The notes under the pieces were generated by a model. That model was not told the origin of the DNA. It saw only the letters and a program-made list of their open reading frames with translations, and did no database searches. Shown in pieces: positions 8,626 through 46,183 of a stretch of 64,000 nt of DNA (its first letter is position 1; every line of letters starts with the position of its first letter). Location of the stretch: NCBI GenBank assembly GCA_964252035.1, contig OZ176208.1. One strand, 5' to 3'. The DNA is from Podarcis erhardii. Lineage: Eukaryota. Made by a program: the position numbers and the translations under genes.

Positions 8626-8885
8626 CCGTATTTTTCGCTCTATGAGACGCACCAGACCACAAGACGCACCTAGTTTTTAGAGGAGGAAAACAAGGAAAAA
8701 AAATATTCTGAATCTCAGAAGCCAGAACAGCAAGAGGGATCGCTGCGCAGTGAAAGCAACAATCCCTCTTGCTGTTCTGGCTTCTGGGATAGCTGCGCAG
8801 CCTGCATTCGCTCCATAAGACGCACACACATTTCCCCTTACTTTTTAGGAAGGAAAAAATGACTCTTATAGAGCAAAAAATACGG
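8626..8885. mobile_element. Tc1/mariner-type MITE (CCGTATTTTTCGC TIR family)
   Basis: TIRs CCGTATTTTTCGCTCTAT / ATAGAGCAAAAAATACGG + TA; related copy in opposite orientation at 36249-36709. Confidence 0.85.
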
Positions 8886-10414
8886 TAAATATGAGCACAG
8901 CTAAAATCCCATTTCCGGTCATGGCTGTAATGCATGTTAGAAATGGTGAACAAAACTTTGCGTTATATCTGTATATACAACAAACTAATATTAATGGTGT
9001 CCCAAGCTAAGAGAGAACTGTTGTATTATTTATTGTAGCTGCTACAGTTTGAGTACCATTTTCTAGTAAGTATGATCAGGTAATAAGACTTCATTGAAGG
9101 ATATGCATATTTAAAACCCTGCCCTGTTTAAGCATAGGAGCCCTTTGAGAATTTCATCTCTAGACTTCAAAGTATCTCCTTGGGAGTTGAATACACTGCT
9201 ATAACCTTGATGGGTCTTTCAGAGAAATAGTACATTCCTCCAGTTCTCCAAGGACAGTATTTTCCATAGGTGAAATATATATTTAAGAAATGCTTACCTG
9301 TTACCTTTTGGAATCAAAAAAATCTTTGTAGTTTAGAGAATTGTATAATTATAATACAGTCTACTAGAAGGGAGAGAGTCTTCAACCATTAACTTTTTGT
9401 CCTGCAAATAGTTTGCACCGTCATTGTTTTACAAGGTATGCATGAACTAGTATAGTTGCTTTAAAGAAGTAAGACTTGATTAACATGTTTTGAAAAACCA
9501 GTTTCCTTAGCTAAGCAGAAACTTTGCTAAGGTGAGTGGGCAGGAGTGATGTTAGAGGGCAAGGTAAGCAAAAGCAGCAGAATGTCTCCAGGCAGCAGGT
9601 GTGTGAATTCTGTAATGACTGGGTGGTCCCCATTAAATGTCATTATGGAAGCGTGGCAAGTTAAATTTTTGAGTCCCCAATAAATAAAGCTGGTTCATCA
9701 AGTCTAGTTATGTCAAGGAAAAACATACCTATATGCCTTGGCTTCATACACTTTTGTATAGGAATTGCAAACTGTATTTACTATCTTAAAGCCACTTTCG
9801 TGTGTACCTCTGTTTATAGGGAGGGTTTATCACAGTTGGTTTTGCTTTAAACTTGATATAAATTTAGAGCTGATTTTTGGAATGGAGACAACTTCATCCT
9901 AGCAGTGGATTTTTGCTAATTTGCAGCCTAATTATATGCTTTACTCAGTCCTAGTCAGTGATGTGCAGTGTTAAGTTTTCCCCCAGGTCTTAAGTTCATT
10001 AGTAACAAAGAACGGATGCCAATTGAAAATACAGTATTAGGCAAGCTTGGTAGTTTCAATGTTTTTAGCTTTGTGTACTAAATTCAAGTAAAATAAACTT
10101 GCTAAATTAGATCTTACTTTAGGGCATCAAAAAAAGTTTCACTGCAGATTACCCTAATTTCCCAGTTAACTTTTTTCTCACAAAACATACATCACTGGGG
10201 CAAGTTCTTGTATTACCATGGCAGCATAAGACCCACTGCTCCTTCCTGCGCCATCAGAGAATTTGAGAAGTCAATATGAAAAGAGTCCATTCTGCAGTTC
10301 CTGCCAGCGTTGAACCCTGGATTGATGGTGTCATATAGATGAATGATGGCACAGGCTTCTCCTGCATGGTTTGGAGTGTCTCATGTTCTCTTGGCAGTAT
10401 AGGAAGTGGGGGGG

Positions 10415-11165: not shown

Positions 11166-13039
11166 AACCGTGTGCTTGCGTAATCCTGACCAGGATTTCC
11201 CGTCTCCTACTCTTACCTCCCAACTGTTGCTGGTAAGGACATCTATCTTCTCAAAACTGCCTCGCCAGATGTACTGTGTAGAATTGGGCATTTAACTACT
11301 TTAAAAAGACTGATGATTGGCTAAAAGAATTGATTGGAGCCTTAATATTATGCGAGCAAAGATATTAATCATCAGCATGTTTGATACTTAATGCTAATTA
11401 CTAAAAAAAAAATAGCTGTCGTTAGGCATCCTAAAGAAGCAATGGATTTTATTTATTATGCCTTCCTTCAAGGCACTCCCGTTTTATTCTCAACAACCCT
11501 GTGAGTTATCTTTAAGCTGAGTGTGTGTGGCCAGCCCAAGGTTGCTTAACAAACTTAATGGCTGAGTGACCATTTAAATCTTAGTCCAGTCCCATAAGGC
11601 AAAGCAACCTCTTCAACTGATGACTTGCTGTGTTCCTTTTTGGAACTCTCTTCCTATTTGGAGATGTCTGCAGGTGTTGGCGAAAGAAGCCTTGTGACTT
11701 CTCTGGGGCTATTGAGGCAAGCTGTCCTCATTCCTGCTCTTACTAACAGGTGACTTCATAATGAAATGACTTGAGCAATCATCTCTGTGGAAAGTGGGCC
11801 CATTCTGCTCATGCTGCAGAACACTGAGTTCTTACAAGAAGTGTCCCATCCATGCATGTAACAGTATATGAACAGCTTAGTTTTCATTATGTGCCCTGGA
11901 CCTTTCCCTGGGCCAGTCTGTGTAATGACTCATCTCTTAGGCCAGTTTAGATGCCCATGCATTCGGTGCATGTTGTCACAGCCACGCTGTCCACACACTC
12001 TACTGTAACTTAAGCCTTAGTGTCTATAACTGAAATGATACACGTTCTTCCCCTGTTTACCTCTCTGCCTGGTGGTGCAGCTAGTCTAGTCTTGAGGCCA
12101 AAATCCAGGCTGTCATAGCCGGTGGTGGGGAGCAGGTGACCATCCAGACCAGGGTTTGAAATTAGCAGGGCGCCAGGCGCATTTTGCACCTAAAGATTCT
12201 CCGTTTGCGAGCACCTCAAAAAGTCTGGCCGCCATTTTGTGTGTGACACTTAAGGATTACTGAAATTATGTGCTTTGAAGCCTGGAAGTATGTGTTAAGG
12301 ATAGACAATATGTTAAGGAGTTTAACAATAAAGAGTAGAGTGTTTTCAAAACTGAAGTACGGTACCAACATTTTTATTGTAAATGCCAAATTAAGCATGT
12401 CTTAACAATTTTTGCTAAAAATGTGATACAGTGGTCACTTATGTGAATTGCATATTAGTTCATGCTTATCAAAATAATAAATAAAAAGTGTTGCTGGCAC
12501 ACACACCCCAACCCAGGTCCCAGAAACCATTTGGCTCCTAGCTTTTCTATCCCAGTTTAGGAAGATTTTTTAATCTGGGGTGGTTTGGCATGTCCATGTT
12601 TACAGATTCTCATACATCTTATCACATATATTAAACTTTTCTACAGCAAAATGGTATTTGTTCGTAGTGTGTCTAGCATCAGTGCAGCAGAATCAAACTC
12701 TCTGATTCCTATTAGAATGTGAAACTGCATTTGCTCAGAATATTTCTTTTCTTTTTATCAGGGTCGGCAAACTGTTTTGGGTTTGTTTGTTTTTCTGTAT
12801 TGTATCAGGAATGTAGAAGCAATTAATAAGGCATAGAGTAACATGGGGAGAGATTTTGTGTTCTTCAGAGCGGAATTCATACAAAAGTAATACTGTTAAG
12901 GCTGGGGTCAAAATTGCTTGGTTGCACCACCTGCATCTACTTCCTCTGTGGTCTCCCTGTCTCAAATTATAGATAGTATGCTAAGTCATCTGGGTAGGGA
13001 CTTTTGTATCTGTAAATCACTATGCACATTGATGGAAAT

Positions 13040-27530: not shown

Positions 27531-28863
27531 AATGCTTTCCATTTTACTTTGTGGTAATCAATCTCTCCAGAACAGGAGATGATGCACCACTATTTAAGTG
27601 TGATATAATGGTCTCATTACGTTACAAGAGTGATGACCCATAGACCAGCAAGTTGGATTTTATGGAGCAGACGTGTGCAAATCAACCAGTTGTGTTTATG
27701 CTTTGTTAAAATCTTTTTTAAATTAACGGGTGGCTGAGGCATTGCTACTTGAGTGTTCCTTGCAGCATTAGTAAACTCCTTTGTTCTCACTACTTGTTGC
27801 CTTTGCGGCCAAAAACCTTGGAATTTTCTTACTGGGAATCTGCTCAGGGGAAGGCATATTACTTCTCCTACCAGCCTAAGTTGCATTTTTCTGCTGCAGA
27901 GTAGGCATTCTTCTCCCCAGCCCAAACAGCTAAGAGAAGGAACTTCCTCCCAAAGTAGATACGGAACCTTCCATATTGTGGCCAGTATGCTGAGCCTTGG
28001 GTAACACACACAAAACCATTTCCTAATCCACAATAATAGAGCTTTCATATCCTGGCAGCCCTAAACTACCCCTTCTCCATGTGCCTATTGCTGAGGCAGA
28101 TGTGCCGAAACACTTAGGGGTGGGGACAGAATGTTCTCCTTAATCTTTAGGTTTACGTTAAAGTTGCTGTTGTGAATAAAAGGGGCATGCTGGATCCTTT
28201 GGGGCACTGAGAAACAATACTAGGTTGTCTTATTGGGAGCAACTGAATCACAACTGGTTGAACATTCTAATAGTTTTGCCAAGAGGCAGCATCGGCTGAG
28301 GCAAAAAAGTTAAGTCTAGGATGCACACAACTCTCTGGTCGCTCACATGGCTGCCTGCAGGTATCTTTTTCAAATCTCTTGCTCTTCCTCTCAAAGCAGC
28401 CCAGGGTAGCAAAAAGCCCCATCACGTACTGATGAGCTGTGCCTTCCTTGAGTTACTTGGCACAAAGTTCAAAATGCAACAGCAGCGCACACATACAGCC
28501 GCCACATCTCTAGGTCTTCCCCCAAGGAAACCGCCTGAAATTTTGGAAGGAGAAATGGACGATTTTCTCCCACATCTAACTCATCTGTGAGTACGATAGC
28601 AGCAGCAGAAGAAGAATGGAAGCACCAAAAGAAGCACCAACAGCTATGCCGTGTGGAAAATCAATGTAACTTTCGCTGTAAGAGAGGAGACCAAGCATAA
28701 AGCATCATCTCTTCAACTACAATGGGTCTGGGTTAGAGGATCACGCTCCAAGCTTATAGATCCTCCTTGCAGACACAGCTGTGTGTCATCCCCAGCGCAT
28801 TTTCAGAATGAACTTTCCGAAAGGAATAATGCTCATAGTCAAGTCCTGGTAGAACACTCAGTA

Positions 28864-29089
28864 TAGTGGTACCTCGGGTTAAGAACTTAATTCGTTCTGG
28901 AGGTCCGTTCTTAACCTGAAACTCTTCTTAACCTGAAGCACCACTTTAGCTAATGGGGCCTCCTGCTGCTGCCGTGCTGCCGGAGCACGATTTCTGTTCT
29001 CATCCTGAAGCAAAGTTCTTAACCCAAGGTACTATTTCTGGGTTAGCGGAGTCTGTAACCTGAAGCGTCTGTACCCCGAGGTACCACTG
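28864..29089. mobile_element. Tc1/mariner (pogo/Tigger-like) MITE, copy 1
   Basis: TA|TAGTGGTACCTCGGGTT ... CCCCGAGGTACCACTG|TA. Confidence 0.9.
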
Positions 29090-29110
29090 TACATGTGAAA
29101 AGGTTCCAGA

Positions 29111-29268
29111 GGTCTTGGTGAACCACTAGCTTGACATGAGTCAACAGAGTGATGCAACAACAAAAAAAGGCTACTGCTATTCTAGGCTGCATCAACAGAA
29201 GTTGATAAGGGAAGTGATAGTCCTGCTCTTTTCTGCCCTGGTCAGATCCCACCTGGAGTCCTGTGTCT
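29111..29268 (+). mobile_element. Degraded CR1 LINE ORF2 fragment
   Basis: Reads approximately LDMSQQ.DA..KKA.AILGCINRS...EVIVLLFSALVRSHLESCV, like the CR1 ORF2 C-terminus. Confidence 0.8.
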
Positions 29269-29864
29269 AAACCCTGCAATGCAGGACTGTCAACTAAAGC
29301 ATCCATGACAGATGGCCATCCACACAAAACCCTCAAGCTGTTTTTCAAGGCAGACTCCAGACCCTTGCTGGAAGTGTCCTTAGGCCTCTCTTCTGTACAT
29401 AGGGAAAGCACCATGGAGCACATCTGGAGGTGGTCCATGACATCTGGAAGAAAGTAAAATTGGTTAATCAAACGGTGGTAGACTTAGATCTACACACACT
29501 GGACTGGTAGCATCCTGACAGATTAAGAAACAGTATATTTAGGTAGCTCTGAAGTTCTTTCCTCTGCATCTGCACTGGGGTATTAAGGAAGCTCAGATCA
29601 GGTTTGCCAAACCTGGTGCCCTCCAATGTTTTGGACTATAACTACCATAATTCCTAACCATTAGCTAGCAGGGGTTGGTGGGAGTTATACCCTAAAACTT
29701 CTGGAGGGCATGGGATTACAGAAGGCAGGTTTGGATTGATCACCCATGCTAAGCTCTTAAAATTTAATATAGAACACTAATGTTTCATTGACCTCTAGCA
29801 TCTCCTAGATGTAATCCATCATTTTAAAAAGCCCACCTGATGATGGTACAAACCCCTTCAAATA

Positions 29865-30093
29865 CAGTGGTACCTCGGGTTAAGTACTTAATTCGTTCCG
29901 GAGGTCTGTTCTTAACCTGAAACTGTTCTTAACCTGAAGCACCACTTTAGCTAATGGGGCCTTCTGCTGCTGCTGCCGTGCTGCCGGAGCACGATTTCTG
30001 TTCTCATCCTGAAGCAAAGTTCTTAACCCAAGGTACTATTTCTGGGTTAGCGGATTCTGTAACCTGAAGCGTATGTAACCCGAGGTACCACTG
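29865..30093. mobile_element. Tc1/mariner (pogo/Tigger-like) MITE, copy 2
   Basis: TA|CAGTGGTACCTCGGGTTA ... TAACCCGAGGTACCACTG|TA; near-identical to 28864-29089. Confidence 0.92.
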
Positions 30094-30185
30094 TACAGTA
30101 CATGTCTTGCAAGAACACATTCAGTAATGACTATCTTCATAGCCTCTGTCCCAAATTAAACACTGGCGTAGAGATACTTGCTATG

Positions 30186-31323
30186 GGGGGGCCACCAGGT
30201 GGCGCATTGGAAGATGGCCGACAATAACATCTCTCCGACCCACACAAGGTAATTAAGAGGCTGCTATGGGAAGTATTCAGTCTTCCCGATCCCCCAAGGA
30301 GATGGGGGGGGGACTGCCTTGCCAGCGGTGTCCATAATGCACCCCCGGATTCGAAAGAAGTGGGTGCCGGTCACTTGGCATCAGCCCTTGGTGAAGTCGG
30401 CTCTTCCTGACGCTGTCTCCAATCTGCGTGTGCTGGTTCGCTTTAGCTCGAAAATATAATTGGAAATATACAATTGGAAAGAAGCTAAAGCACATACATC
30501 AAGCAAAGTTCGGGAGATAAGACTGCTGATTAATGGATCTCTGGGATCGGAGCGGTGGTGCAGGACAAATAAATCAAGTGATGAAGCGCCATTAAGAGAC
30601 TGGTATGTCTGGAGTGAAGAAGGGGGCTGGAGGAAAAACCTTCTTTTCTTTGCCTTATGGGAGTATTAATAACCCTCCACCCCAAAGAAAGAAGAATCGC
30701 CGTATTTTATTTATCACAAGCAGAAATTTAAAAACTGTGGGGGGGGGGGGAATTAAAGAACAAAGAGAGGATTGGTAAATATCGGAGAATAGAAAAATTC
30801 TATGACGCAGTTTTAAATGGTGTCTTGTAAGGCAGGCTTGTCTAAGAAAGACGGGGGGAGGAGGACCAGGATTATTGGAATGTGAATGATGATTGGAATG
30901 CGATCTTATCCTGGCAGAGCCCTCTTTGAGATATCTGACAAGCCTGGGAAAACTAAAAGGCAGACCGAAGATAAACTTTTGAAGGAGGAGGGGGAATGGC
31001 GACTGTCCCTATGAGATATGACTTGTGGAGTGTGTAAAACCCACACAGACGATGTTTGCTTCCGACCTGCTTGTGAAGATTATCAGAGATCGCAAAGAAA
31101 GGAATATATGACAACAACAAGATGAAGAAAGTAATAAAGAGACTATCTGGACAGAACTGTTTAATTAAAGCAGTAATAGAAGTGATGTTTGGACCCTCGT
31201 TCGGAGCTTGATGTATGGGTACCCCCAACAAAATTTTAAAATCTGGCTGTATAATTTGGAATTAATGTGATTTGAAACAATGTGATTTGATTGGCCTGTT
31301 AATAAAAATTATGTTAAAAAAAA
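30186..31323 (+). mobile_element. Non-autonomous poly(A) retroposon (L1-mobilised type), no long ORF
   Basis: 16-bp TSD AGAGATACTTGCTATG (30170-30185, 31324-31339); 5' G-run and AAGATGGCCG; 3' TAATAAAAATTAT + poly(A). Confidence 0.85.
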
Positions 31324-31929
31324 AGAGATACTTGCTATGTTCCTCTGATCAGCGCTAAATATTAAAAGGTTACAAAATGCAAAATTCAGAGTTTCAAGAA
31401 ATTGTATTCTAAGACCTTACAGGACAGGCCGATTTTGATTCAGCAGATCAAAAACCCCAATTCCCCTCAAACAGTCTTGGTAAATCTCCTTGGCTACATA
31501 CCTTAGTAAATGTATTTTTCATTATACCATCTGCAGCTTCTCTTGTTTCCCTGATATTTTAGGTTTCTTAGAGGTGTTGTGTGCAATACCGGAATGCTCT
31601 TTGCTTTCTGAACACTCCAGAATACACAAGTCATCTTGCTGTGAAAACTATGACCAGAGGTTCTGTTCACAATGCAAAATCTTTCTATTTCAAATGGAGT
31701 GATGCTTGATTAGCTGTTTCTTGCCTATTTTGTTCTTTTAATCTATGAAATCCAGGGCCTAAGTATTTTACACTACTATCTGGTCCACTGGAGAACACAC
31801 ACTTTCCCAAAGTGTCAAAATCTTATGTGTTGACATCAGTGCTTAGGCAGCAGGAAATTTATTGGTCCTACACAGATACAGAGATGCCATGCAGAACTGA
31901 GGCAAAGTAGAAATTATACTTTTCTGGGG

Positions 31930-33073
31930 AGAAAAATGATACCATATGACACCTAGAAGCATTTATTTTATGCAACAAACTTAAATATGATCATGTGTAC
32001 GTTAAAAGTGTACACTGTATGCTGAACAATGCCAGGGGGAAAATCAATATTGATGCAAGTCTTCTAAAATTAAACATTAAAAAATGAGCTTGGGCAGGAA
32101 GACAAAAACGTAAAACAGACTTACTTTCAATCAGCACAATGCTTAAAATTGAGAGCAATCCTAAACATTTCCAACATTCCTTACAAAGCTGCCAAAAGTT
32201 CAACTATTTTTAAAAATTGATATTTTACATCAATAATAAAAATCTGGTGACAAACATTATAAAATCAAATGCTGGGCTGCCTTTACTCCATTAAATTTAG
32301 AATATTCCAACAGAATCACAGGAGTAAACCCACTTAAAAGTGATGTTTTTATAAAACAACCAACAATATGTACATTTATTGCAAATTATATTAAACTAAA
32401 ATGGAGAGGGAAATTAAAAAAAAGATGAAATGTCTACTTGCAAATCAATCAAGTGATTAGTCTCCCACTCAGATAAAAAGTCAGAAAGCAACATGTATAA
32501 AAATTGTCACTATGTGACTTTTCATAGCAGGAACCAAAATCTGTACATCTTATTTAGCTGGAAAGAATTATACATAGGAGTCTCCAAAAGGAAAGCAGAT
32601 GAGAATTCAGGTATTTTCCTTGTGTCTTGGATTAAAATTCTTTCAGTAAGCTTCTATTTTTTTCTTGCAAAAAGGGTGGGCAATACCTGATTCTAGGTCT
32701 GATTTTTTTTTAAAGGATCTCATTCTGACTTTCTTTTAAAAAATGCAGCATGAAAATTTATGGAGTAAAACACTTTTAACTCCAGATATGCAGAAACTGG
32801 AATCAAGTGTTAAGCAATTTGCTTAATTATTGACTTTTCATAAAAAAAGTCTCTGGGAAAATAAGTACAGATGCTTTTAGCCTCTCTCAAGAGTTTCAGC
32901 AGAATAATGTCATCTGAAAGGGAAGCAGATTTTCCTTCTGTTTTCAGAGCTGAAAGCGATGTGATCTGAGTATTTTCAGTTCCTTATACAGGAAATTTCT
33001 TGGTTTTTGCAGAAGCTTGGAGCATGCCTTCATTTGGCCCTCCTTTTCCTCCCCTTGCAAGGAAGTTTTCTTT
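31930..33073 (-). other. PDS5A: PDS5A 3'UTR (minimum extent)
   Basis: AU-rich sequence after the stop; minus-strand AATAAA at 32375-32380 and 31962-31967; blocks resemble the mammalian PDS5A 3'UTR as I recall it (not checked by alignment). It may extend further. Confidence 0.7.
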
Positions 33074-33077
33074 TTAC
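33074..33077 (-). CDS. PDS5A: PDS5A terminal exon coding part (last G of Arg codon + TAA)
   Basis: Long pyrimidine tract ttcttcttctcttcaag|G TAA. In-window exons sum to 3279 nt = 1092 aa + stop, with all phases consistent. Confidence 0.9.
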
Positions 33078-33682
33078 CTTGAAGAGAAGAAGAAGAAAGT
33101 TTAGAAAATGAAACTTCCTGGGAAAACGTTCAAGAGCGAAGTGAACTTTCCCCTCTGAAGTGCACCTTTGATTTCTTTTTTTAAAATCAATTTTTAAATT
33201 CCTTAATTATTATTTTTTATTAAATTTATATCCCGTCTTTGTTCCATCTTGGACCCCAACATACATGGGTACATGGCATACAGTCATCTAGCCTATGCAC
33301 ACTTACCTGGAAGTAAGCACCACTGGACACATTACCTGAATATTTATGTCTAGGGATTGCACTGTCAATTGTGTTTGTATTCACATCATCTTTGATGTAG
33401 GTGATAAAGGTCTGGTTGAAATTCCACTGAGGACAATAATTTGCATTTATATGAGGCTGATAATCTTTTTATGAATTGATTTGGGGGTGGGGAGATACAT
33501 TACTTTAAATTTACATTATTTAAGTAAATTTCCACTGCAATAATGTAAAGAGCATCATAAAGATGCTGTAGCATTTGTCTAGAAAAGCTCAGCAATTGAA
33601 ACTCTTGTCGAAGGAAGGAAGGTGGGAAGAATGACAGGAATATAGCAGTTTCGCGTGTTCCCAGTTTATTGACTTTTATTAC

Positions 33683-33994
33683 CTAACTTCCACTAAATTT
33701 TTAACATGCTGAAGTACTGTGTGATCTTCTACATCCATGTCAGCGACATTTCTACAAGGACTGACCAGCACCACCTCCTCCCAGCACCCATAATTATACA
33801 AACATAGCCCTGTATAATCTCCCTGCTGCACCTTCAAGAAGCCACTCTCTGTTAGTTCTGTCTCCTCAGTGTCTTCCTGGCTGCCTGTATCCTCAGTGTC
33901 ACAAAGCTTAAAAAGATCCATTTCACTTGGAGAATATCCAGGACTTGATTCTATCTCGAACACTGACTCTCCATCACTTCCCAGCACCTTGCTT
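33683..33994 (-). CDS. Candidate alternative PDS5A exon (312 nt, in-frame, +104 aa, acidic)
   Basis: ctaacgtttttcag|AAGC acceptor; stop-free in the phase-2 frame inherited from exon 32; ends GTTAG|gtaata. Not part of the PDS5A protein I know; no transcript evidence available here. Confidence 0.6.
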
Positions 33995-36248
33995 CTGAAA
34001 AACGTTAGAATGGGAATATCATTTGGGAGTAAAAGCCTAGCTAAATCAAACTAGGAGTTGCACTTCTGTCCTTTGAGCTGAGACGAAATGAGCTCTGCTT
34101 TTCGGAGCTTAAGTCAATTTTTGTTAGCATGAGATTTCTCTTAACCTTCTTTGAAAGGGCAAGTGGTCTACATAAGGAATAACAATGGACTTTACAGATG
34201 TGTAAGAATGGTTTCTATACTTCTTTAGACAATTATCAGCTATATTGGAACAATATATACTATTAAATACAGGCAACATCTGATTTGCACGGGGTTGCAT
34301 TCCTGGCCCCCTTTTCTGGCCACTTCTGGGTTGTGGCGATGCACGTGTACATGATCATGCATGCATTGAACAAGCGTAAAATGGTTGTTGCCTGTATACT
34401 TCAGTTGGTTTTAACTATGCCAGAGATACAGATTTCCCCTCACCAGTATACATGTAAAAGGATGCCTAATCAAATTCCTTACATAAAAGAATATCTCCTC
34501 TGTTTTCAATAAGATCTCAAAGAGCTAATTTAAGCATGTCCAAGGACAGGCCTTCCCAATTTGTGACCCAACAAGCTCAAGACAATCTAGTAGTCATGTA
34601 CAACATTGATTGGCCACAAGGTGGTGGTGGGATCACAAGTTGGGTAGGCCTACCCAAGAGCCTGCATATATTTGGTACAATTTTTGAGCACCAGATTCGT
34701 ATGCCATCTCACTGTTTGCTTCTGAAACTCCTCCCAGTCTAAGAAATAGGCTGTGCAGCCAGCCATTATTTGTGGCCACCAACCCTGACCATGTCCCTTC
34801 CCAGGAATCTTCTAACATATGTAGAGGATGGGAGTGGGGAGAAGGTAGGATCAGGACTTGATACTACCTCCAGAGAGACAACTGTGAGAGATTCAGGTTG
34901 CTCCTGACTATGTGAGGAAGCTGGTCCCTCTCATTTGGTGTTGGACATCCAGTAACTGCCTTTGTGAGCCCTTGAAGGGGGCTGAAATTTAAGAAACAAG
35001 CCCCCATGGTTCGGACAACAAAGTAAACTCATCGGACAGTTGTTCAGAAGGCTAAGGATTCCTAGGCAGGCTTCCTTCATACTGATGCTGATGCTTTTGA
35101 CCAGGGGAATGGTCAGTAGCCAATAGTAAACACCACCCTAGGAAGGCCATATATGAATTAAGTAGGTATCTCTACTCCTGCTAACTCGCCAGGTCAACAG
35201 CTAGTTTTAAAAACAATTTTATAATTGACCACAGGTTGAAGGACCAGTAAGACTGGTTAGGGGCACACAAATTCTGACTGGGCATCATGCTTGTCAACCA
35301 TCTCGACTGGCCCCTCAAGTCTTCCAGTAAGTGCAGAGACCTTGGGGTACCACAGTTCTTATAGCACCACATTGCCTTGTCATGATCCCTGATCCCAGTG
35401 AAAACTATCCCTAACACAAATCCTAGCCCCACACCACTTCTAGAAGTCCCAATCCTACCCTGCTGTGCTGCCATTATCCCACAGCAACATGCACACACAG
35501 AGGGTAACAGGGAGGAGGTGAATAGACAAAATTGAGAGCAGCCAGGTTGCTCAGGTGCTCTGGAAGAGCTGCTTGCTTCTGAATTTGATTTTCAAGACTG
35601 GGTCCAGGTTGCAGTAACTACTCCTCACTGCACACTTGAGGAACTGCAGGCAAAAAATAGATGAGCCAAAGTGCCAAAACACTCTGGAGGAAGGCAGAAT
35701 TTCTTTCTCATGCCCGAAGAGACATCTCTTCCTCAAAGTTCTTTACCCTGGAGATGGGTGGTATTATCCCTAGTTAGGGGATTTCTGAAACCATTTACAC
35801 TGGCTTTCCCCACTGATTCTGATGTGAACCAAGCCACACGCAAAAGACTAACTCACGCTCCAACTATGAACAACTTTCTCCCATCATGCACTTCAACTGC
35901 TTACTCTGACATGTCTGTGCCTTGCCTTGTGCAAAGTAAACAACAGCCGAGATGCAAAATACATAAGAAGAAAAATCTACCACAGCCAATTTTGCTGTTT
36001 ACACATGGATGGGGATGTCGAGGATTTTTTTTTTACCTGCTTCCCAACTTGCGTTGAAGAAAGCCTTCAAGTTGCATAACGGCAGGTGAGTACATAGGGG
36101 ACTAGAGTGCACCTTTAGGGTGCCAGTTGCCCATTCTTTTTTTAAAAAAATGTGTGTTTTGATTTTTCTTATAAAGCATACAGGATAAAAACAATGATAC
36201 CTAACATTAGGGAAAACAAACCAGCTGATTCCACCAATAAGGGAAATA

Positions 36249-36709
36249 CCGTATTTTTCGCCCTATAGGACGCACTTTTCCCCCTCCAAAAATGAAGGGG
36301 AAATGTGTGTGCGTCCTATGGGGCAAATGCAGGCTTTCGCTGAAGCCTGGAGAGCGAGAGGGGTCGGTGCGCACCGACCCCTCTCGCTCTGCAAGCTTCG
36401 CGGACCTCTCCGCAAGCAGCGGGAGCGCTACCGCTGCTTGCGGAGAGTTGCTTGCATGCAGAAGCCTGCGCGCACTGAGCTCAGCGCGACCAGGCTTCGC
36501 GGACCTCTCCGCAAGCAGCGGGAGCCAGCGCTGGGCTCCCACGGCTTGCAGAGAGCTGCCTGTTTGGGGGCTGGGGCGGGGGAAGCTCGGGCCTCCCCCG
36601 CCCCAGCCCCGCACCTGGGGGGGGGGAATAATTTTTTCCCCTTTATTTCCCCTCCAAAAAACTAGGTGCGCCTTATGAGACGGTGCGTCCTATAGGGCGA
36701 AAAATACGG
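36249..36709. mobile_element. Tc1/mariner-type MITE (CCGTATTTTTCGC family) with GC-rich internal repeats
   Basis: TA|CCGTATTTTTCGCCCTATAGGACGCAC ... GTGCGTCCTATAGGGCGAAAAATACGG|TA (perfect 27-bp TIR); internal duplicated GCTTCGCGGACCTCTCCGCAAGCAGCGGGAGC. Confidence 0.93.
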
Positions 36710-36989
36710 TAATAGTTTGTCTGTAGTAATATTACAGAATGTCTCTGTTTGATTTGTACTATTCAGCCCAGAGTTCCTGACCACAGTTGGCCATGTGTAT
36801 CCGGAGGACTAGTTGCAAACAAGCAATACCATGTTTCATGAAATCTATCCACCTCAGAGTTTTTCCTAAACACAAACAATCTAAGGGTTTTTCCATTAGT
36901 GCCCACTTTCAAATTTCTTGATCCCAGCAGCAGTTGCCTATTCTTAACAAGAAGGGACAGGAGCAGCTCATATGGTTGACTGACTGGAT

Positions 36990-37556
36990 CAGGGGTCAGC
37001 AAACTTTTTCAGCAGGGGGCCAGTCCACTGTCCTTTGTGGGGGGACGGACTATATTTATGAAAAATATATACAGTGGTGCCTCGCAAGACGAAATTAATC
37101 CGTTCCGCGAGTCCCTTCGTCTTGCGGTTTTTTCGTCTTGCGAAGCACGGCTATTAGCGGCTTAGCAGCTTTAAGAAAAAGTAAACAAACTCGCAAGAAC
37201 TCATAAGACGTTTCGTCTTGCGAAACAAGCCCATAGGGAAATTCGTCTTGCGAAGCACCTCAAAAAACGGAAAACTCTTTCGTCTAGCGAGTTTTTCGTC
37301 TTGCGGGGTACCACTGTATATATGAACGAATTCCTATGCCCCACAAATAAACCAGAGATGCATTTGAAATAAAAGCACACATTCTACTCATGTAAAAACA
37401 CCAGGCAGGTCCCACAAATAACCCAGAGATGCATTTTAAATAAAAGGGCACATTCTACTCATGTAAAAACACATTGATTCCTGGACCGTCCGTGGGCGAG
37501 ATTTAGAAGGCAATTGGGCTGGATCCGGTCCCCGGGCCTTAGTTTGCCTACCCATG
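36990..37556. mobile_element. hAT-type MITE hosting a nested insertion
   Basis: TIRs CAGGGGTCAGCAAACT / AGTTTGCCTACCCATG; 8-bp flanks GACTGGAT / GTCTGGAT; internal ~70-bp tandem duplication. Confidence 0.85.
37072..37316. mobile_element. Tc1/mariner-type MITE (GCAAGACG-repeat family), nested
   Basis: TA|CAGTGGTGCCTCGCAAGACG ... CGTCTTGCGGGGTACCACTG|TA. Confidence 0.92.
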
Positions 37557-38092
37557 GTCTGGATTTTGGCAAGATCAGATCTCCAAGAGCTGGCCACTCT
37601 GCCGACTTATCAGCAGCCACTGCAGCTCTGAATATTCCATGTCAGCTGGCTTTTTAAAATGGAGAGACTTCTGATAATTGGTCTTCCACACTCCCTGACC
37701 CTGGTGTTCATCTGCATTTGCATGGGGGGGGGCGGGGCGGGAATCTTTTGAGGGGTGTCTTTTTATACATGCACACATATCTCTGTGTTAAAGAAAACCT
37801 GTGTTATGCAAATGAATTTGCTGCATTTTTTGAAAACATGTATTGCTCAGCAATTGGCTTTTGTGTGTGGTGGGGAAGGACTAAGGCTAAGTGAAGAGGA
37901 ATCAAAGGGCACAAATAAACAAGAAACATGTGATGAGAGAGGAAAGAGTGCGGGGAGCAGTGTGCAGGAAAGTGAAAAAGAAGTTCCGTGGAGATGGTTA
38001 GGATTTACTGTGATGTCATTTGGCATTTCTGGCAAATTAGAGCCAATTCAGGACAGCTTCCCAGAGAAAGAAAGCAGTGTATTTGTGTTTAC

Positions 38093-38448
38093 CTTTGTAG
38101 ATCAATCTGTCTCTGTGCTGGTACTGCTTTTTTCGGTGCATCTTGCTGTTTTGGTGCTTTGGCATTGCTTGCCTCTAAACTCCCTGGACCTTCCTGGCTG
38201 GGTGCTGCCCTTTTCCGCCCCCTCCCAGATGGTTTACTTGTTTCAGCATTTTTTGCCATGGTGCCCTGAGATTCAGACTTGGGAGGACGCCCTCTCCTTG
38301 GTTTCGGAGGGGCAGGCTGGCCCGATTCATCTGTTTTTTTCTCTTCTGACTTTTGATGAATATTTTCTGCTCCGGCGGCTGTTGCAGTTCTTTTCTTCCC
38401 ACGCTCAGTGCTAACATTTCCTTGCGTTGCCTGATCAGAGTTTATCTC
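38093..38448 (-). CDS. PDS5A: PDS5A exon ~32, basic disordered C-terminus ([10 protein letters not shown] ... [11 protein letters not shown] ... AQRQIDLQR)
   Basis: ctctag|GAG ... CAAAG|gtaaac; 356 nt; ends in the characteristic QIDLQ-R. Confidence 0.96.
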
Positions 38449-38943
38449 CTAGAGGGGGGGAAATAAGGCTTAGCTTGTTGTCAGCTGAATCCCTGACAGT
38501 CAGGTGGCAGTTATATCTGCTTCAAAACCTTGCAAGAATTTAAGAAAGAAGTTTCCAAGGGCAGCTACAGCAATAACCTTTCAAGTACCACAAAATAATC
38601 GGTCCAAGGGGACATACTGTTGCAGTGGGGAATTCTCATTCCCCAAAATATAAAGCAGCATTTGGGAAACTCGTTATAGAAATACAACAAGCTTTGAAGT
38701 ATTTCTCAGTGTTGTGTCTACTGGCTTAGGTTTTCTACTTAAATTAAAATCCAACTTAAAACATTATGGGCATGAAACAAATTATCAGATGAAACTGTTG
38801 ACGTTATCAATCTGGGATGTGTTTTCATGGAATGGCAAATAAAATGCAACAGTTGTATTAAAATGTTAGTCACCAATTCCTGGATACAATTTTTAGTCGG
38901 ATTACCTATAAGTAGAATGTGCTTTAAAAAAATTCAACCATAC

Positions 38944-39049
38944 CTTGTTCTTTACAGGTTCTATTTTTGCTGGGGTGACAGAAATAATTCTCACTGGATT
39001 TTCATCATTTTCACTGACACCAGTTTCTGATATGTCTGAGCTCTGCTCT
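38944..39049 (-). CDS. PDS5A: PDS5A exon ~31 ([35 protein letters not shown])
   Basis: caacag|AGAG ... ACAAG|gtatgg; 106 nt. Confidence 0.96.
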
Positions 39050-45544: not shown

Positions 45545-45744
45545 CTGGAATAACATAATATAAACATGTTCTAAGCATAATGTAAAGACACATAGCCAAC
45601 ACCAGAGATTTTTCAATTTTTCTATTATGCAAGTAAGCAATATAGCTGTAACACATTTTACAAAAATATTGTGAAGCTAATTCAATTGTGTGATTATTGG
45701 AAGATTTAAGGAATGAACTCTCAGAGCATATATGAACACAACTA

Positions 45745-46095
45745 CAGTGGTGCCCCGCAAGACGAACGCCTCGCAAGACGGAAAACCCGCTAGACGAAAG
45801 GGTTTTCCGTTTTGGAGGCGCTTCGCTAAACGAATTTCTCTATGGGGTTACTTCGCAAGACGAAAAAATCTTGCGAATTCCCGCGGGGGTTTTTCGCCCC
45901 CCCCTTTCCTAAGCCGCTAAGCCGCTTATCAGCTGTTCCACTGATAAGCCGCCTCTCAGCTGATCGCTAAAAGCCGCTAGACCGCTAATAGCGCTAATCC
46001 GCTAAGCCGTCAATGGGCTTGCTTCGCAAGACGAAAAAACCGCTAGACAAAGAGAATCGCGGAACGGATTAATTTCGTCTTGCGAGGCACCACTG
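45745..46095. mobile_element. Tc1/mariner-type MITE (GCAAGACG-repeat family)
   Basis: TA|CAGTGGTGCCCCGCAAGACG ... CGTCTTGCGAGGCACCACTG|TA; inverted relative to 37072-37316; internal GCCGCTAA repeats. Confidence 0.92.
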
Positions 46096-46183
46096 TACTA
46101 TATTCTTCAACCACAACCAAAAAACAGAATTTGAAATAAAAATGCCACAAGATACAATTTTACTTGCAAGCAAATTTACTAAC

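What the first reader, a model, noticed from the sequence alone, without database searches (positions are those of the whole stretch)
33679..33994. Hidden in-frame 312-nt exon in the last PDS5A intron, giving a candidate long isoform with a 104-aa acidic C-terminal extension
Seen in sequence: on the minus strand there is an acceptor CTAAC-GTTTTTCAG| at 33994 (branch-point-like CTAAC, pyrimidines, CAG). Exon 32 ends in phase 2 (CAA AG|), and this exon read in phase 2 is stop-free for exactly 312 nt, ending GTT AG|GTAATA, again phase 2. It therefore slots between exon 32 and the terminal G-TAA exon without a frameshift. Added sequence: R-SKVLGSDGESVFEIESSPGYSPSEMDLFKLCDTEDTGSQEDTEETELTESGFLKVQQGDYTGLCLYNYGCWEEVVLVSPCRNVADMDVEDHTVLQHVKNLVEV-R*. 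It has 23 D/E against 5 K/R in 103 residues and three Ser-Pro sites, and resembles no repeat in the window. Established: PDS5A regulates cohesin loading and release with WAPL and sororin, and normally ends at QIDLQR after a basic tail. Inference: an acidic tail after the basic, AT-hook-bearing tail could tune DNA or chromatin binding, possibly in a tissue-restricted (e.g. germline) isoform. A stop-free 104-codon frame with matching splice phases at both ends is unlikely by chance in AT-rich intron, but I have no transcript evidence and do not know whether it is already annotated.
Basis: partly seen in the sequence, partly recalled or inferred. Interest (0 to 1): 0.85.

Follow-up and report, generated by a model that had tools for sequence, protein, structure and literature searches.

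The report
Conserved PDS5B-like hidden exon in PDS5A
The last intron of the cohesin regulator gene PDS5A holds a 163-base exon-like block, conserved from lizards to bats, that matches the next-to-last coding exon of the sister gene PDS5B; if spliced in it would give PDS5A a PDS5B-style tail, but no spliced transcript was seen.

Summary
The open frame alone is not special: the window has 49 stop-free stretches of 100 codons or more.

Comparison with other species changes the picture. Only the first half is conserved, at 33994-33832 plus about 25 nt downstream. In a second squamate, a slowly evolving sauropsid-like group and mammals (bat RNA contigs), this block is the only alignable part of the last intron.

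The block always starts at the invariant TTTTCAG|AAGC. It is 163, 154 or 151 nt long, always 3n+1. In most lineages it ends at a weak AAG|GTG donor.

It has the same position and the same phases (2 in, 0 out) as the 139-nt penultimate coding exon of PDS5B. The peptide profiles resemble each other (hhalign P = 0.004; 1 of 300 shuffles). After it, the PDS5A terminal exon reads VKRKLxxKGRK-stop in most lineages, against VRRRGSKRERR-stop in PDS5B.

Against coding: omega is 0.65 (not significantly below 1), the substitution pattern looks like the 3'UTR, no spliced ORF was found, and the donor is lost in one bat clade.

Best reading (about 0.5): a weak-site alternative exon giving a PDS5B-like C-terminus. 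Main rival: a relic exon kept for an RNA-level role.

The parts
38091..38093 (-). End of PDS5A exon 32 (..CAA AG, last base 38093) and its donor GT (38092-38091). Reading through the donor gives AGG TAA, the same R-stop as the spliced form.
   Evidence: The same arrangement is found in L024.
33995..34010 (-). 3' splice-site-like motif ttctaacgtttttcag: a short pyrimidine run and an invariant CAG. Conservation across species begins here.
   Evidence: TTTTCAG|AAGC is invariant in 11 DNA sequences. Pyrimidines at -23..-4 number 8-15 of 20, against 15-19 of 20 at the terminal-exon acceptor.
33832..33994 (-). Conserved exon-like block of 163 nt. It enters in phase 2 and leaves in phase 0. It encodes (R)SKVLGSDGESVFEIESSPGYSPSEMDLFKLCDTEDTGSQEDTEETELTESGFLK. 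It is the counterpart of the 139-nt penultimate coding exon of PDS5B.
   Evidence: It is the only alignable intron block in distant species. It is open in all 11 DNA sequences and 24 ORF clusters. Lengths are 163/154/151 nt, all 3n+1. hhalign against the PDS5B exon gives P = 0.0039, and 1 of 300 shuffles reaches that score.
33807..33831 (-). Conserved flank that begins with the weak donor GTGCAG. Group A carries TAG here, so the bases are conserved but not as coding sequence.
   Evidence: There are 0 differences from L006.
33683..33806 (-). It is specific to this lizard clade and is not conserved as coding sequence.
   Evidence: It does not align to L001, L002, L004, L005, L023 or L024. P0008 reads the same bases in another frame. 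Divergence from L006 is 1.7% with a 3-nt gap, against 4.2% and 10.2% in the flanks, so use of a clade-specific donor is not excluded.
33665..33682 (-). No conservation was seen in distant species.
   Evidence: No alignment beyond L006/L007.
33030..33077 (-). Start of the terminal exon. The canonical reading is G TAA. In phase 0 it reads VKRKLPCKGRKRRAK-stop. Other species read VKRKL[A/T/I][R/C]KGRK-stop (11 aa), against PDS5B VRRRGSKRERR-stop (11 aa).
31946..33029 (-). Conserved PDS5A 3'UTR. It was used as the noncoding control for the codon tests.

Best explanation
Window 33994-33832 (minus strand) is the PDS5A counterpart of the penultimate coding exon of its paralogue PDS5B. It has been kept under purifying selection in the last PDS5A intron across amniotes.

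Proposed mechanism (inferred, not shown):
- The exon is flanked by a short-tract acceptor and a weak AAG|GTGCAG donor, so it is normally skipped. Exon 32 then joins the terminal exon as AG|G TAA, and the protein ends QIDLQR.
- When the exon is included, its 3n+1 length moves the terminal exon into phase 0.
- The protein then gains an acidic, Ser-rich stretch of about 54 residues followed by a short basic end (VKRKLPCKGRKRRAK in this lizard; VKRKLxxKGRK elsewhere). This is a PDS5B-type C-terminus of about 69 extra residues.
- The stretch carries invariant Ser-Ser and a nearly invariant SQED.
- The even conservation of all three codon positions would reflect dense splicing-regulatory information, as is usual for regulated minor-form exons.

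Shown: conservation, exon-like boundaries, phases, open frame and paralogy.
Inferred: splicing, translation and any effect on cohesin.
For: - Conservation island. In L001, L002, L004, L005, L010, L013, L023 and L024, only window 34007-33809 and the terminal exon/3'UTR align within the intron. In the 25-kb contig L024, only the coding exons, this block and the terminal exon align.
- Range. The sequences span squamates, a second sauropsid-like group and mammals. L002 and L003 come from bat total-RNA runs SRR21780604-23.
- Close relative. Against L006 the block differs at 1.2%, against 4.2% and 10.2% in the flanks.
- Exon signals. TTTTCAG|AAGC is invariant. The length is always 3n+1. The two indels are 12 and 3 nt.
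- Open frame. Frame 0 has 0 stops in 9 sequences, against 27 and 38 in the other two forward frames. None of 906 3'UTR control windows is open in all six species. One ORF-independent DNA hit (L024) is also open.
- Paralogy. The PDS5B exon is 139 nt, with phase 2 in and phase 0 out. The profile-profile match has P = 0.0039, and 1 of 300 column shuffles reaches it. The terminal-exon phase-0 ORF is 11 codons and basic in both genes.
Against: - No transcript evidence. All 24 ORF clusters are unspliced genomic or pre-mRNA contigs. None starts with the exon-32 peptide or ends with the spliced tail.
- Weak protein-level constraint. ML omega is 0.65, and the LRT against 1 gives 2dlnL = 3.6, p about 0.057. 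Pooled pN/pS is 0.68, against a median of 0.71 in 3'UTR pseudo-frames. Variable columns by codon position are 25/22/28. Real exon 32 gives pN/pS 0.24 and 21/9/39.
- The donor is weak everywhere. It is lost in one bat clade (GAG|atg) and probably in P0021/P0022 (KA).
- L004 has a 1-nt deletion in the basic tail, and the window has an altered tail.
- The relatives were found through ORF databases, so the 'always open' result is biased by how the sequences were found.
Confidence: 0.5

Rival explanations
1. Relic exon with a noncoding RNA-level role. The block descends from the ancestral PDS5 exon but is no longer translated. It would be kept as a regulatory element of the pre-mRNA. One option is a decoy or regulatory exon that controls removal or retention of the last intron. 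Another is a 3'UTR element of the intron-retaining mRNA, which encodes the same protein because the donor reads AGG TAA.
For: - The substitution pattern cannot be told apart from the conserved 3'UTR, and omega is 0.65, not significantly below 1.
- Conservation continues about 25 nt past the donor, over a TAG in group A.
- Read-through of the exon-32 donor gives the same stop in the window and in L024.
- Bat total-RNA contigs carry the intron joined to the terminal exon.
- The donor is lost in bats while the block is still recognisable.
- No spliced ORF was found.
Against: - It does not explain the open frame in every sequence seen, the 3n+1 length kept through two indels, or the retained PDS5B-like phase-0 tail with a stop at codon 12.
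- RNAalifold finds no covariation.
- Rfam gives no match.
Confidence: 0.33
2. A 312-nt in-frame cassette exon (33994-33683) uses the AG|GTAATA donor, adds 104 residues and ends R-stop.
For: - The frame and the donor-like site exist.
- Against the close relative L006, the 3' half differs at 1.7% with a 3-nt gap, less than the flanks at 4.2% and 10.2%.
- The ORF is kept in L006/L007.
Against: - The 3' half does not align to any distant species.
- Other squamate-like sequences stop 13-30 codons after FLKV, and P0008 reads the same bases in another frame.
- The donor has no counterpart in PDS5B.
- The comparison with L006 rests on 2 differences against about 6 expected (p about 0.05).
Confidence: 0.07
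3. Chance open frame or a transposon ORF remnant with no function.
For: - Open frames of this length are common in the window.
- Pfam gives nothing.
- The 3' half has a weak similarity to a tandem-repeat ORF, P0006.
Against: - The block is single-copy in the window.
- It sits at the orthologous position, 0.4-1 kb upstream of the terminal exon, in every species.
- It is conserved where the rest of the intron is not.
- The P0006 match is 28% identity over 39 residues and is inflated by its repeats.
Confidence: 0.03

Closest known systems
Penultimate and last coding exons of PDS5B (..RVGRSKQAATKENDSSEEVDVFQGSSPVNDDIPQEETEEEEVSTVN | VRRRGSKRERR-stop)
   Same: - Same place in the gene: after the basic exon and before a terminal exon that begins GTR.
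- Same phases: 2 in, 0 out.
- Length 3n+1.
- An acidic, Ser-rich peptide with blocks S-E-x-D-[LV]-F-[KQ] and Q-E-[DE]-T-E-[DE]-x-E-[LIV].
- An 11-residue basic end with the stop at codon 12.

   Different: - The PDS5B exon has a long pyrimidine tract and a good GTATGT donor, and is 86-100% identical in protein among the hits.
- The PDS5A block has weak sites and only 50-83% protein identity.
- The PDS5A block is absent from the described 1337-aa protein. The review PMC8198109 mentions no such isoform and calls the two C-termini predominantly different.
Conserved minor-form alternative exons (own knowledge: low synonymous rate, raised dN/dS, conserved flanking intron, weak splice sites)
   Same: - Nucleotide conservation in the exon and about 25 nt of flank.
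- Weak 3' and 5' splice sites.
- pS lower than in the neighbouring exon (0.31 against 0.47), and omega about 0.65.

   Different: - Inclusion has not been observed.
- The length is not a multiple of three. This exon would switch the frame of the terminal exon rather than insert a module.
Decoy or poison exons in retained introns (own knowledge, e.g. those described in erythroblast intron retention)
   Same: - A conserved, exon-like block with splice sites inside an intron.
- That intron appears unspliced in total-RNA contigs.
- The coding signature is weak.
   Different: - Such exons need no open frame.
- With the conserved donor, the stop would lie in the last exon, so no nonsense-mediated decay is expected.

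Membership tests
Paralogue of the PDS5B penultimate coding exon | Same position in the gene: between the basic C-terminal exon and the terminal exon | tested here: met
   The island lies 0.4-1 kb upstream of the terminal exon in all loci, and downstream of exon 32 in the window and L024. For PDS5B, the terminal-exon side was seen: the exon is followed by the terminal exon (L027). That it follows the basic exon rests on the protein sequence as recalled (..KKNV|RVGR); the upstream PDS5B exon was not seen in DNA.
Paralogue of the PDS5B penultimate coding exon | Same intron phases and the same length class | tested here: met
   PDS5A: AG|A in and AAG|gt out, with lengths 163/154/151 nt. PDS5B: the AAT|gt junction (out) and the 139-nt length were read from DNA; the entry phase (GT|C) is inferred from the exon's first bases and the recalled protein sequence. 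All lengths are 3n+1.
Paralogue of the PDS5B penultimate coding exon | Sequence similarity beyond shared composition | tested here: met
   hhalign of A4 against A5 gives P = 0.0039 over 24 columns. One of 300 column-shuffled controls reaches that score. The similarity is modest: phmmer alone did not find PDS5B.
Paralogue of the PDS5B penultimate coding exon | The following exon, read in phase 0, gives a homologous short basic end | tested here: met
   VKRKL[A/T/I][R/C]KGRK-stop against VRRRGSKRERR-stop, both 11 codons ending in TGA. Exceptions are the window (15 aa) and L004 (a 1-nt deletion).
Functional alternative coding exon | Exon-exon junctions seen in RNA | tested here: not met
   No ORF with QIDLQR-S.. 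or ..FLK-VKRK was found among hits of about 34-182 aa. Longer products and annotated isoforms could not be searched.
Functional alternative coding exon | Open frame and frame-preserving indels across species | tested here: inconclusive
   The frame is open in all 11 DNA sequences and 24 clusters, and the indels are 12 and 3 nt. However, the relatives were found through ORF databases. Only L024 came from a DNA pattern, and it belongs to a group already known to be open.
Functional alternative coding exon | Purifying selection on the protein (omega below 1, third-position excess) | tested here: inconclusive
   Omega is 0.65, with LRT p about 0.057. Pooled pN/pS is 0.68 against 0.71 in 3'UTR controls. 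Variable columns by codon position are 25/22/28.
Functional alternative coding exon | Conserved splice sites at both ends | tested here: inconclusive
   The acceptor is invariant. The donor GT is present in 9 of 11 DNA sequences but weak, and it is lost in L002 and L013.
Transposon or repeat-derived ORF | Multiple copies, or a match to a repeat or transposase family | tested here: not met
   No second copy in the window, no Pfam match, and an orthologous single site in all species. Dfam and RepeatMasker were not available.
Structured noncoding RNA | A conserved secondary structure with covariation, or an Rfam match | tested here: not met
   The RNAalifold covariation term is -0.06, with 1 compensatory pair of 32. 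Rfam gives no match in 30000-39000.

The most novel reading that the evidence does not exclude
Across amniotes, PDS5A makes a minor, regulated long isoform. Its C-terminus copies the PDS5B design: an acidic, phosphorylatable Ser-rich stretch with SSP and SQED, followed by a short basic end. The two PDS5 paralogues would then differ less in kind than in the splicing of one exon. Part of what is called PDS5B-specific tail function could be switched on in PDS5A by exon inclusion.
Probability: 0.35. Interest if true: 0.7.

Novelty: new member of a known kind. Interest (0 to 1): 0.5.

Why it matters
PDS5A and PDS5B are described as near-identical in their HEAT-repeat bodies and 'predominantly different' in their C-termini, and those C-termini are thought to carry their specific regulation (review PMC8198109).

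A conserved PDS5B-type exon hidden in the last PDS5A intron means the difference at the extreme C-terminus may come from exon skipping, not gene content. This gives a concrete, testable isoform: named junctions and a peptide ending ..GFLK-VKRKL...

It also identifies a constrained element that variant interpretation in PDS5A would otherwise treat as deep intron.

If the block turns out to be noncoding, it is still a clear case of an ancestral coding exon kept for more than 300 million years for another purpose.

Tried and rejected
- Pfam on the 104-aa peptide gave only a sub-threshold DUF7731 hit.
- The ESM Atlas features pointed weakly to ricin-type lectins, below the recognition level, so I did not follow them.
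- The PDB sequence search with the island profile gave nothing relevant.
- Rfam gave no match. RNAalifold gave no covariation.
- The repeat search in the window found no second copy.
- A possible conserved downstream donor (GTAAGA, about 60-90 nt after FLKV, seen in L001, L005 and L002) is absent from L023 and the window, so I dropped it.
- Poly(A) signals after the block (two AATAAA in the window) have no conserved counterpart in the other loci. An alternative last exon is therefore not favoured, but it is not excluded.
- A relative-rate comparison of the bat clade that lost the donor with L010, worked by hand from the pairwise difference counts, gave about 10.5 against 5.5 changes, which is not significant.
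- Third-position excess in the first 33 nt of the terminal exon was 2/1/4, p = 0.09.
- The P0006 tandem-repeat ORF match to the 3' half is 28% identity and inflated by repeats.
- Literature searches for a PDS5A poison exon, or for long-isoform, C-terminus or alternative-splicing terms, found nothing on this exon.
- Species of most SRA runs could not be identified, apart from the bat runs.
- Full-length annotated isoforms could not be searched, because the protein search only sees candidates near the query's length.

Full report
**1. What is in the sequence**

On the minus strand the window carries the 3' end of PDS5A.
- Exon 32 ends ..CAG ATT GAT CTA CAA AG at 38093 and is followed by gtaaac.
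- The terminal exon starts G TAA AAA GAA at 33077, behind a long pyrimidine tract.
- Between them, ttctaacgtttttcag|AAGC puts a possible first exon base at 33994.
- The frame entered in phase 2 is open for 312 nt, to GTT AG|gtaata at 33683|33682. Two AATAAA hexamers follow directly.

Its statistical argument is not. The window has 49 stop-free stretches of 100 codons or more, and this same intron has several longer ones. No second copy of the segment lies in the window. Pfam and Rfam give nothing.

**2. Relatives**

- A phmmer scan of 1.84 billion representatives found short ORFs with 50-97% identity.
- A profile search found 22 clusters, and a later search added none.
- Together the two searches give 24 clusters, all of them gene calls on Logan/ENA contigs. 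Their N-termini are translated intron (..LLTFFRS.. is the pyrimidine tract and the AG), so the contigs are unspliced.
- I fetched DNA for ten further species or strains.
- An ORF-independent DNA pattern scan of JGI metagenomes gave one 25-kb contig, L024.

In every locus the match lies 0.4-1 kb upstream of an acceptor followed by GTAAAAAGAAA, which is the PDS5A terminal exon. L024 also holds exons 28-32. The loci are therefore orthologous.

A codon tree groups them as follows:
- window + L006 + L004: squamate-like;
- L001/L005/L008/L024 + L023: a slowly evolving sauropsid-like group, taxon not determined;
- L010 + L002/L013.

L002 and L003 come from runs SRR21780620 and SRR21780618. A preprint lists these as total-RNA libraries of Australian bats (10.1101/2022.10.20.513122). 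The third group is therefore mammalian, and the element is amniote-wide.

**3. What is conserved**

Between groups, only two blocks of the region align: window 34007-33809 and the terminal exon with its 3'UTR. Along L024 the aligned blocks are exactly the coding exons, this island and the terminal exon.

- Island identity to the window is 67-79%. The 3'UTR is 71-86% and exon 32 is 81%.
- Conservation starts about 13 nt before the AG and ends about 25 nt after the codons ..FLK.
- Against the close relative L006, the island has 2 differences in 163 nt (1.2%). The flanking intron has 4.2% and 10.2%.

- In group A a TAG follows FLKV at once.
- In mammals and other squamate-like sequences the read-through frame ends after 13-30 codons.
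- P0008 reads the bases GGTGCTGGGAGGAGGTGG as GAGRRW, where the window's frame reads GCWEEV. This is a frameshift between relatives.

**4. Exon-like properties of the island**

- TTTTCAG|AAGC is invariant in 11 DNA sequences.
- The block ends AAG|GTGCAG, GTGTAG or GTGCAT in 9 of the 11. It ends GAG|ATGCAA in the L002/L013 bat clade.
- Its length is 163, 154 or 151 nt, always 3n+1. The only two indels are 12 and 3 nt.
- The frame set by exon 32 has no stop in nine sequences, against 27 and 38 stops in the other two forward frames. None of 906 control windows in the equally conserved 3'UTR is open in all six species.

Caveat: the relatives were found through ORF databases, so openness is partly guaranteed by how the sequences were found.

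**5. Paralogy with PDS5B**

The search returned 13 real genomic ORF clusters and three loci.

| Feature | PDS5B exon | PDS5A island |
|---|---|---|
| Length | 139 nt | 163/154/151 nt |
| Entry | phase 2 (..GT\|C CGT GTA, inferred from the exon start and the recalled protein) | phase 2 (AG\|A) |
| Exit | phase 0 (..GTA AAT\|gtatgt) | phase 0 |
| Next exon begins | GTG CGG.. | GTA AAA.. |
| Next exon, phase 0 | VRRRGSKRERR-stop, 11 codons, TGA | VKRKL[A/T/I][R/C]KGRK-stop, 11 codons, TGA |

The PDS5A tail reading holds in group A and in mammals. In the window it is VKRKLPCKGRKRRAK-stop, and L004 is frameshifted by a 1-nt deletion.

Profile-profile comparison of the two exon peptides aligns S-E-M-D-L-F-K .. 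S-Q-E-D-T-E-D-x-E-L with S-E-E-V-D-V-F-Q .. P-Q-E-E-T-E-E-E-E-V. The P-value is 0.0039, and only 1 of 300 column-shuffled controls reaches that score.

Position, both phases, length class, sequence similarity and the following tail all agree. I take the paralogy as well supported.

**6. Is it coding now?**

The evidence here is mixed.

- A codon model gives omega 0.65 and kappa 2.0. Fixing omega at 1 costs 1.8 log-likelihood units (p about 0.057).
- Pooled pN/pS is 0.68, against a median of 0.71 for pseudo-frames of the 3'UTR.
- Variable columns by codon position are 25/22/28.
- Real exons between the same two species give pN/pS 0.06-0.24. The disordered exon 32 gives 0.24, with differences of 21/9/39 by codon position.

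All three codon positions of the island are thus about equally constrained. This pattern fits a regulated minor-form exon rich in splicing signals (own knowledge). It fits a noncoding element equally well.

No ORF joined to exon 32 or to the terminal exon was found. Only products of about 34-182 residues could be searched, and annotated full-length isoforms could not be checked. A 2021 review of PDS5A and PDS5B mentions no isoform and calls the C-termini predominantly different (PMC8198109).

**7. Reading**

Most likely (about 0.5) the block is a weak-site alternative exon. Its inclusion shifts the terminal exon into phase 0 and gives PDS5A a PDS5B-like acidic-then-basic end, about 69 extra residues in this lizard.

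The main rival (about 0.33) is that the relic exon is kept for an RNA-level role. This rival is favoured by three points:
- the 3'UTR-like substitution pattern;
- reading through the exon-32 donor gives the same AGG TAA stop, so retention of this intron leaves the protein unchanged;
- unspliced intron-plus-terminal-exon contigs occur in bat total RNA.

Its 3' half is somewhat less diverged from L006 than the flanks are. Comparison with other species gives it no support, so I put it at about 0.07. Chance or transposon origin is excluded for the conserved half.

**8. Verdict**

The finding is worth a transcript check.

Noticed in passing
window 38088-38093 (minus strand); L024 (reverse complement) about 12040-12050: The exon-32 donor reads CAA AG|GTAA. 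An mRNA that keeps the last intron therefore stops at AGG TAA and encodes exactly the canonical protein. The last intron is in effect a 3'UTR intron. In L024 the intron starts with AATAAA-like hexamers.
   Followed up: partly
window 33077-31946 (minus strand): About 1.1 kb of the PDS5A 3'UTR is 71-86% identical between this lizard, the other sauropsid-like group and mammals. This is as conserved as the coding exons.
   Followed up: partly
window 33892-33877 and 33865-33850 (minus strand), approximate: The 12-nt insertion specific to the window and L006 (adding DTED/TG) looks like a local duplication of the neighbouring GACACTGAGGAxACAG acidic motif, and it is in frame.
   Followed up: no
window 36200-36700: A GC-rich stretch (63-66% GC) inside the last intron has long open frames on both strands. 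It forms inverted repeats with 8626-8887. It is probably copies of a repeat element.
   Followed up: no
window 28862-30097: Two direct repeat pairs (111 and 134 nt, 95-97% identical) lie about 1 kb apart, downstream of the PDS5A 3' end. This suggests a recent tandem duplication or LTR-like pair.
   Followed up: no
L027:213-401: This PDS5B contig, from run ERR2353909, keeps the intron upstream of the penultimate exon but is already joined to the last exon. It is either a partly spliced pre-mRNA or a species without the last intron.
   Followed up: no
window 37070-37318 and 45743-46097: Several inverted-repeat pairs (83-91% complementary) link the last PDS5A intron with an upstream intron. They are probably the same interspersed element in opposite orientation.
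   Followed up: no
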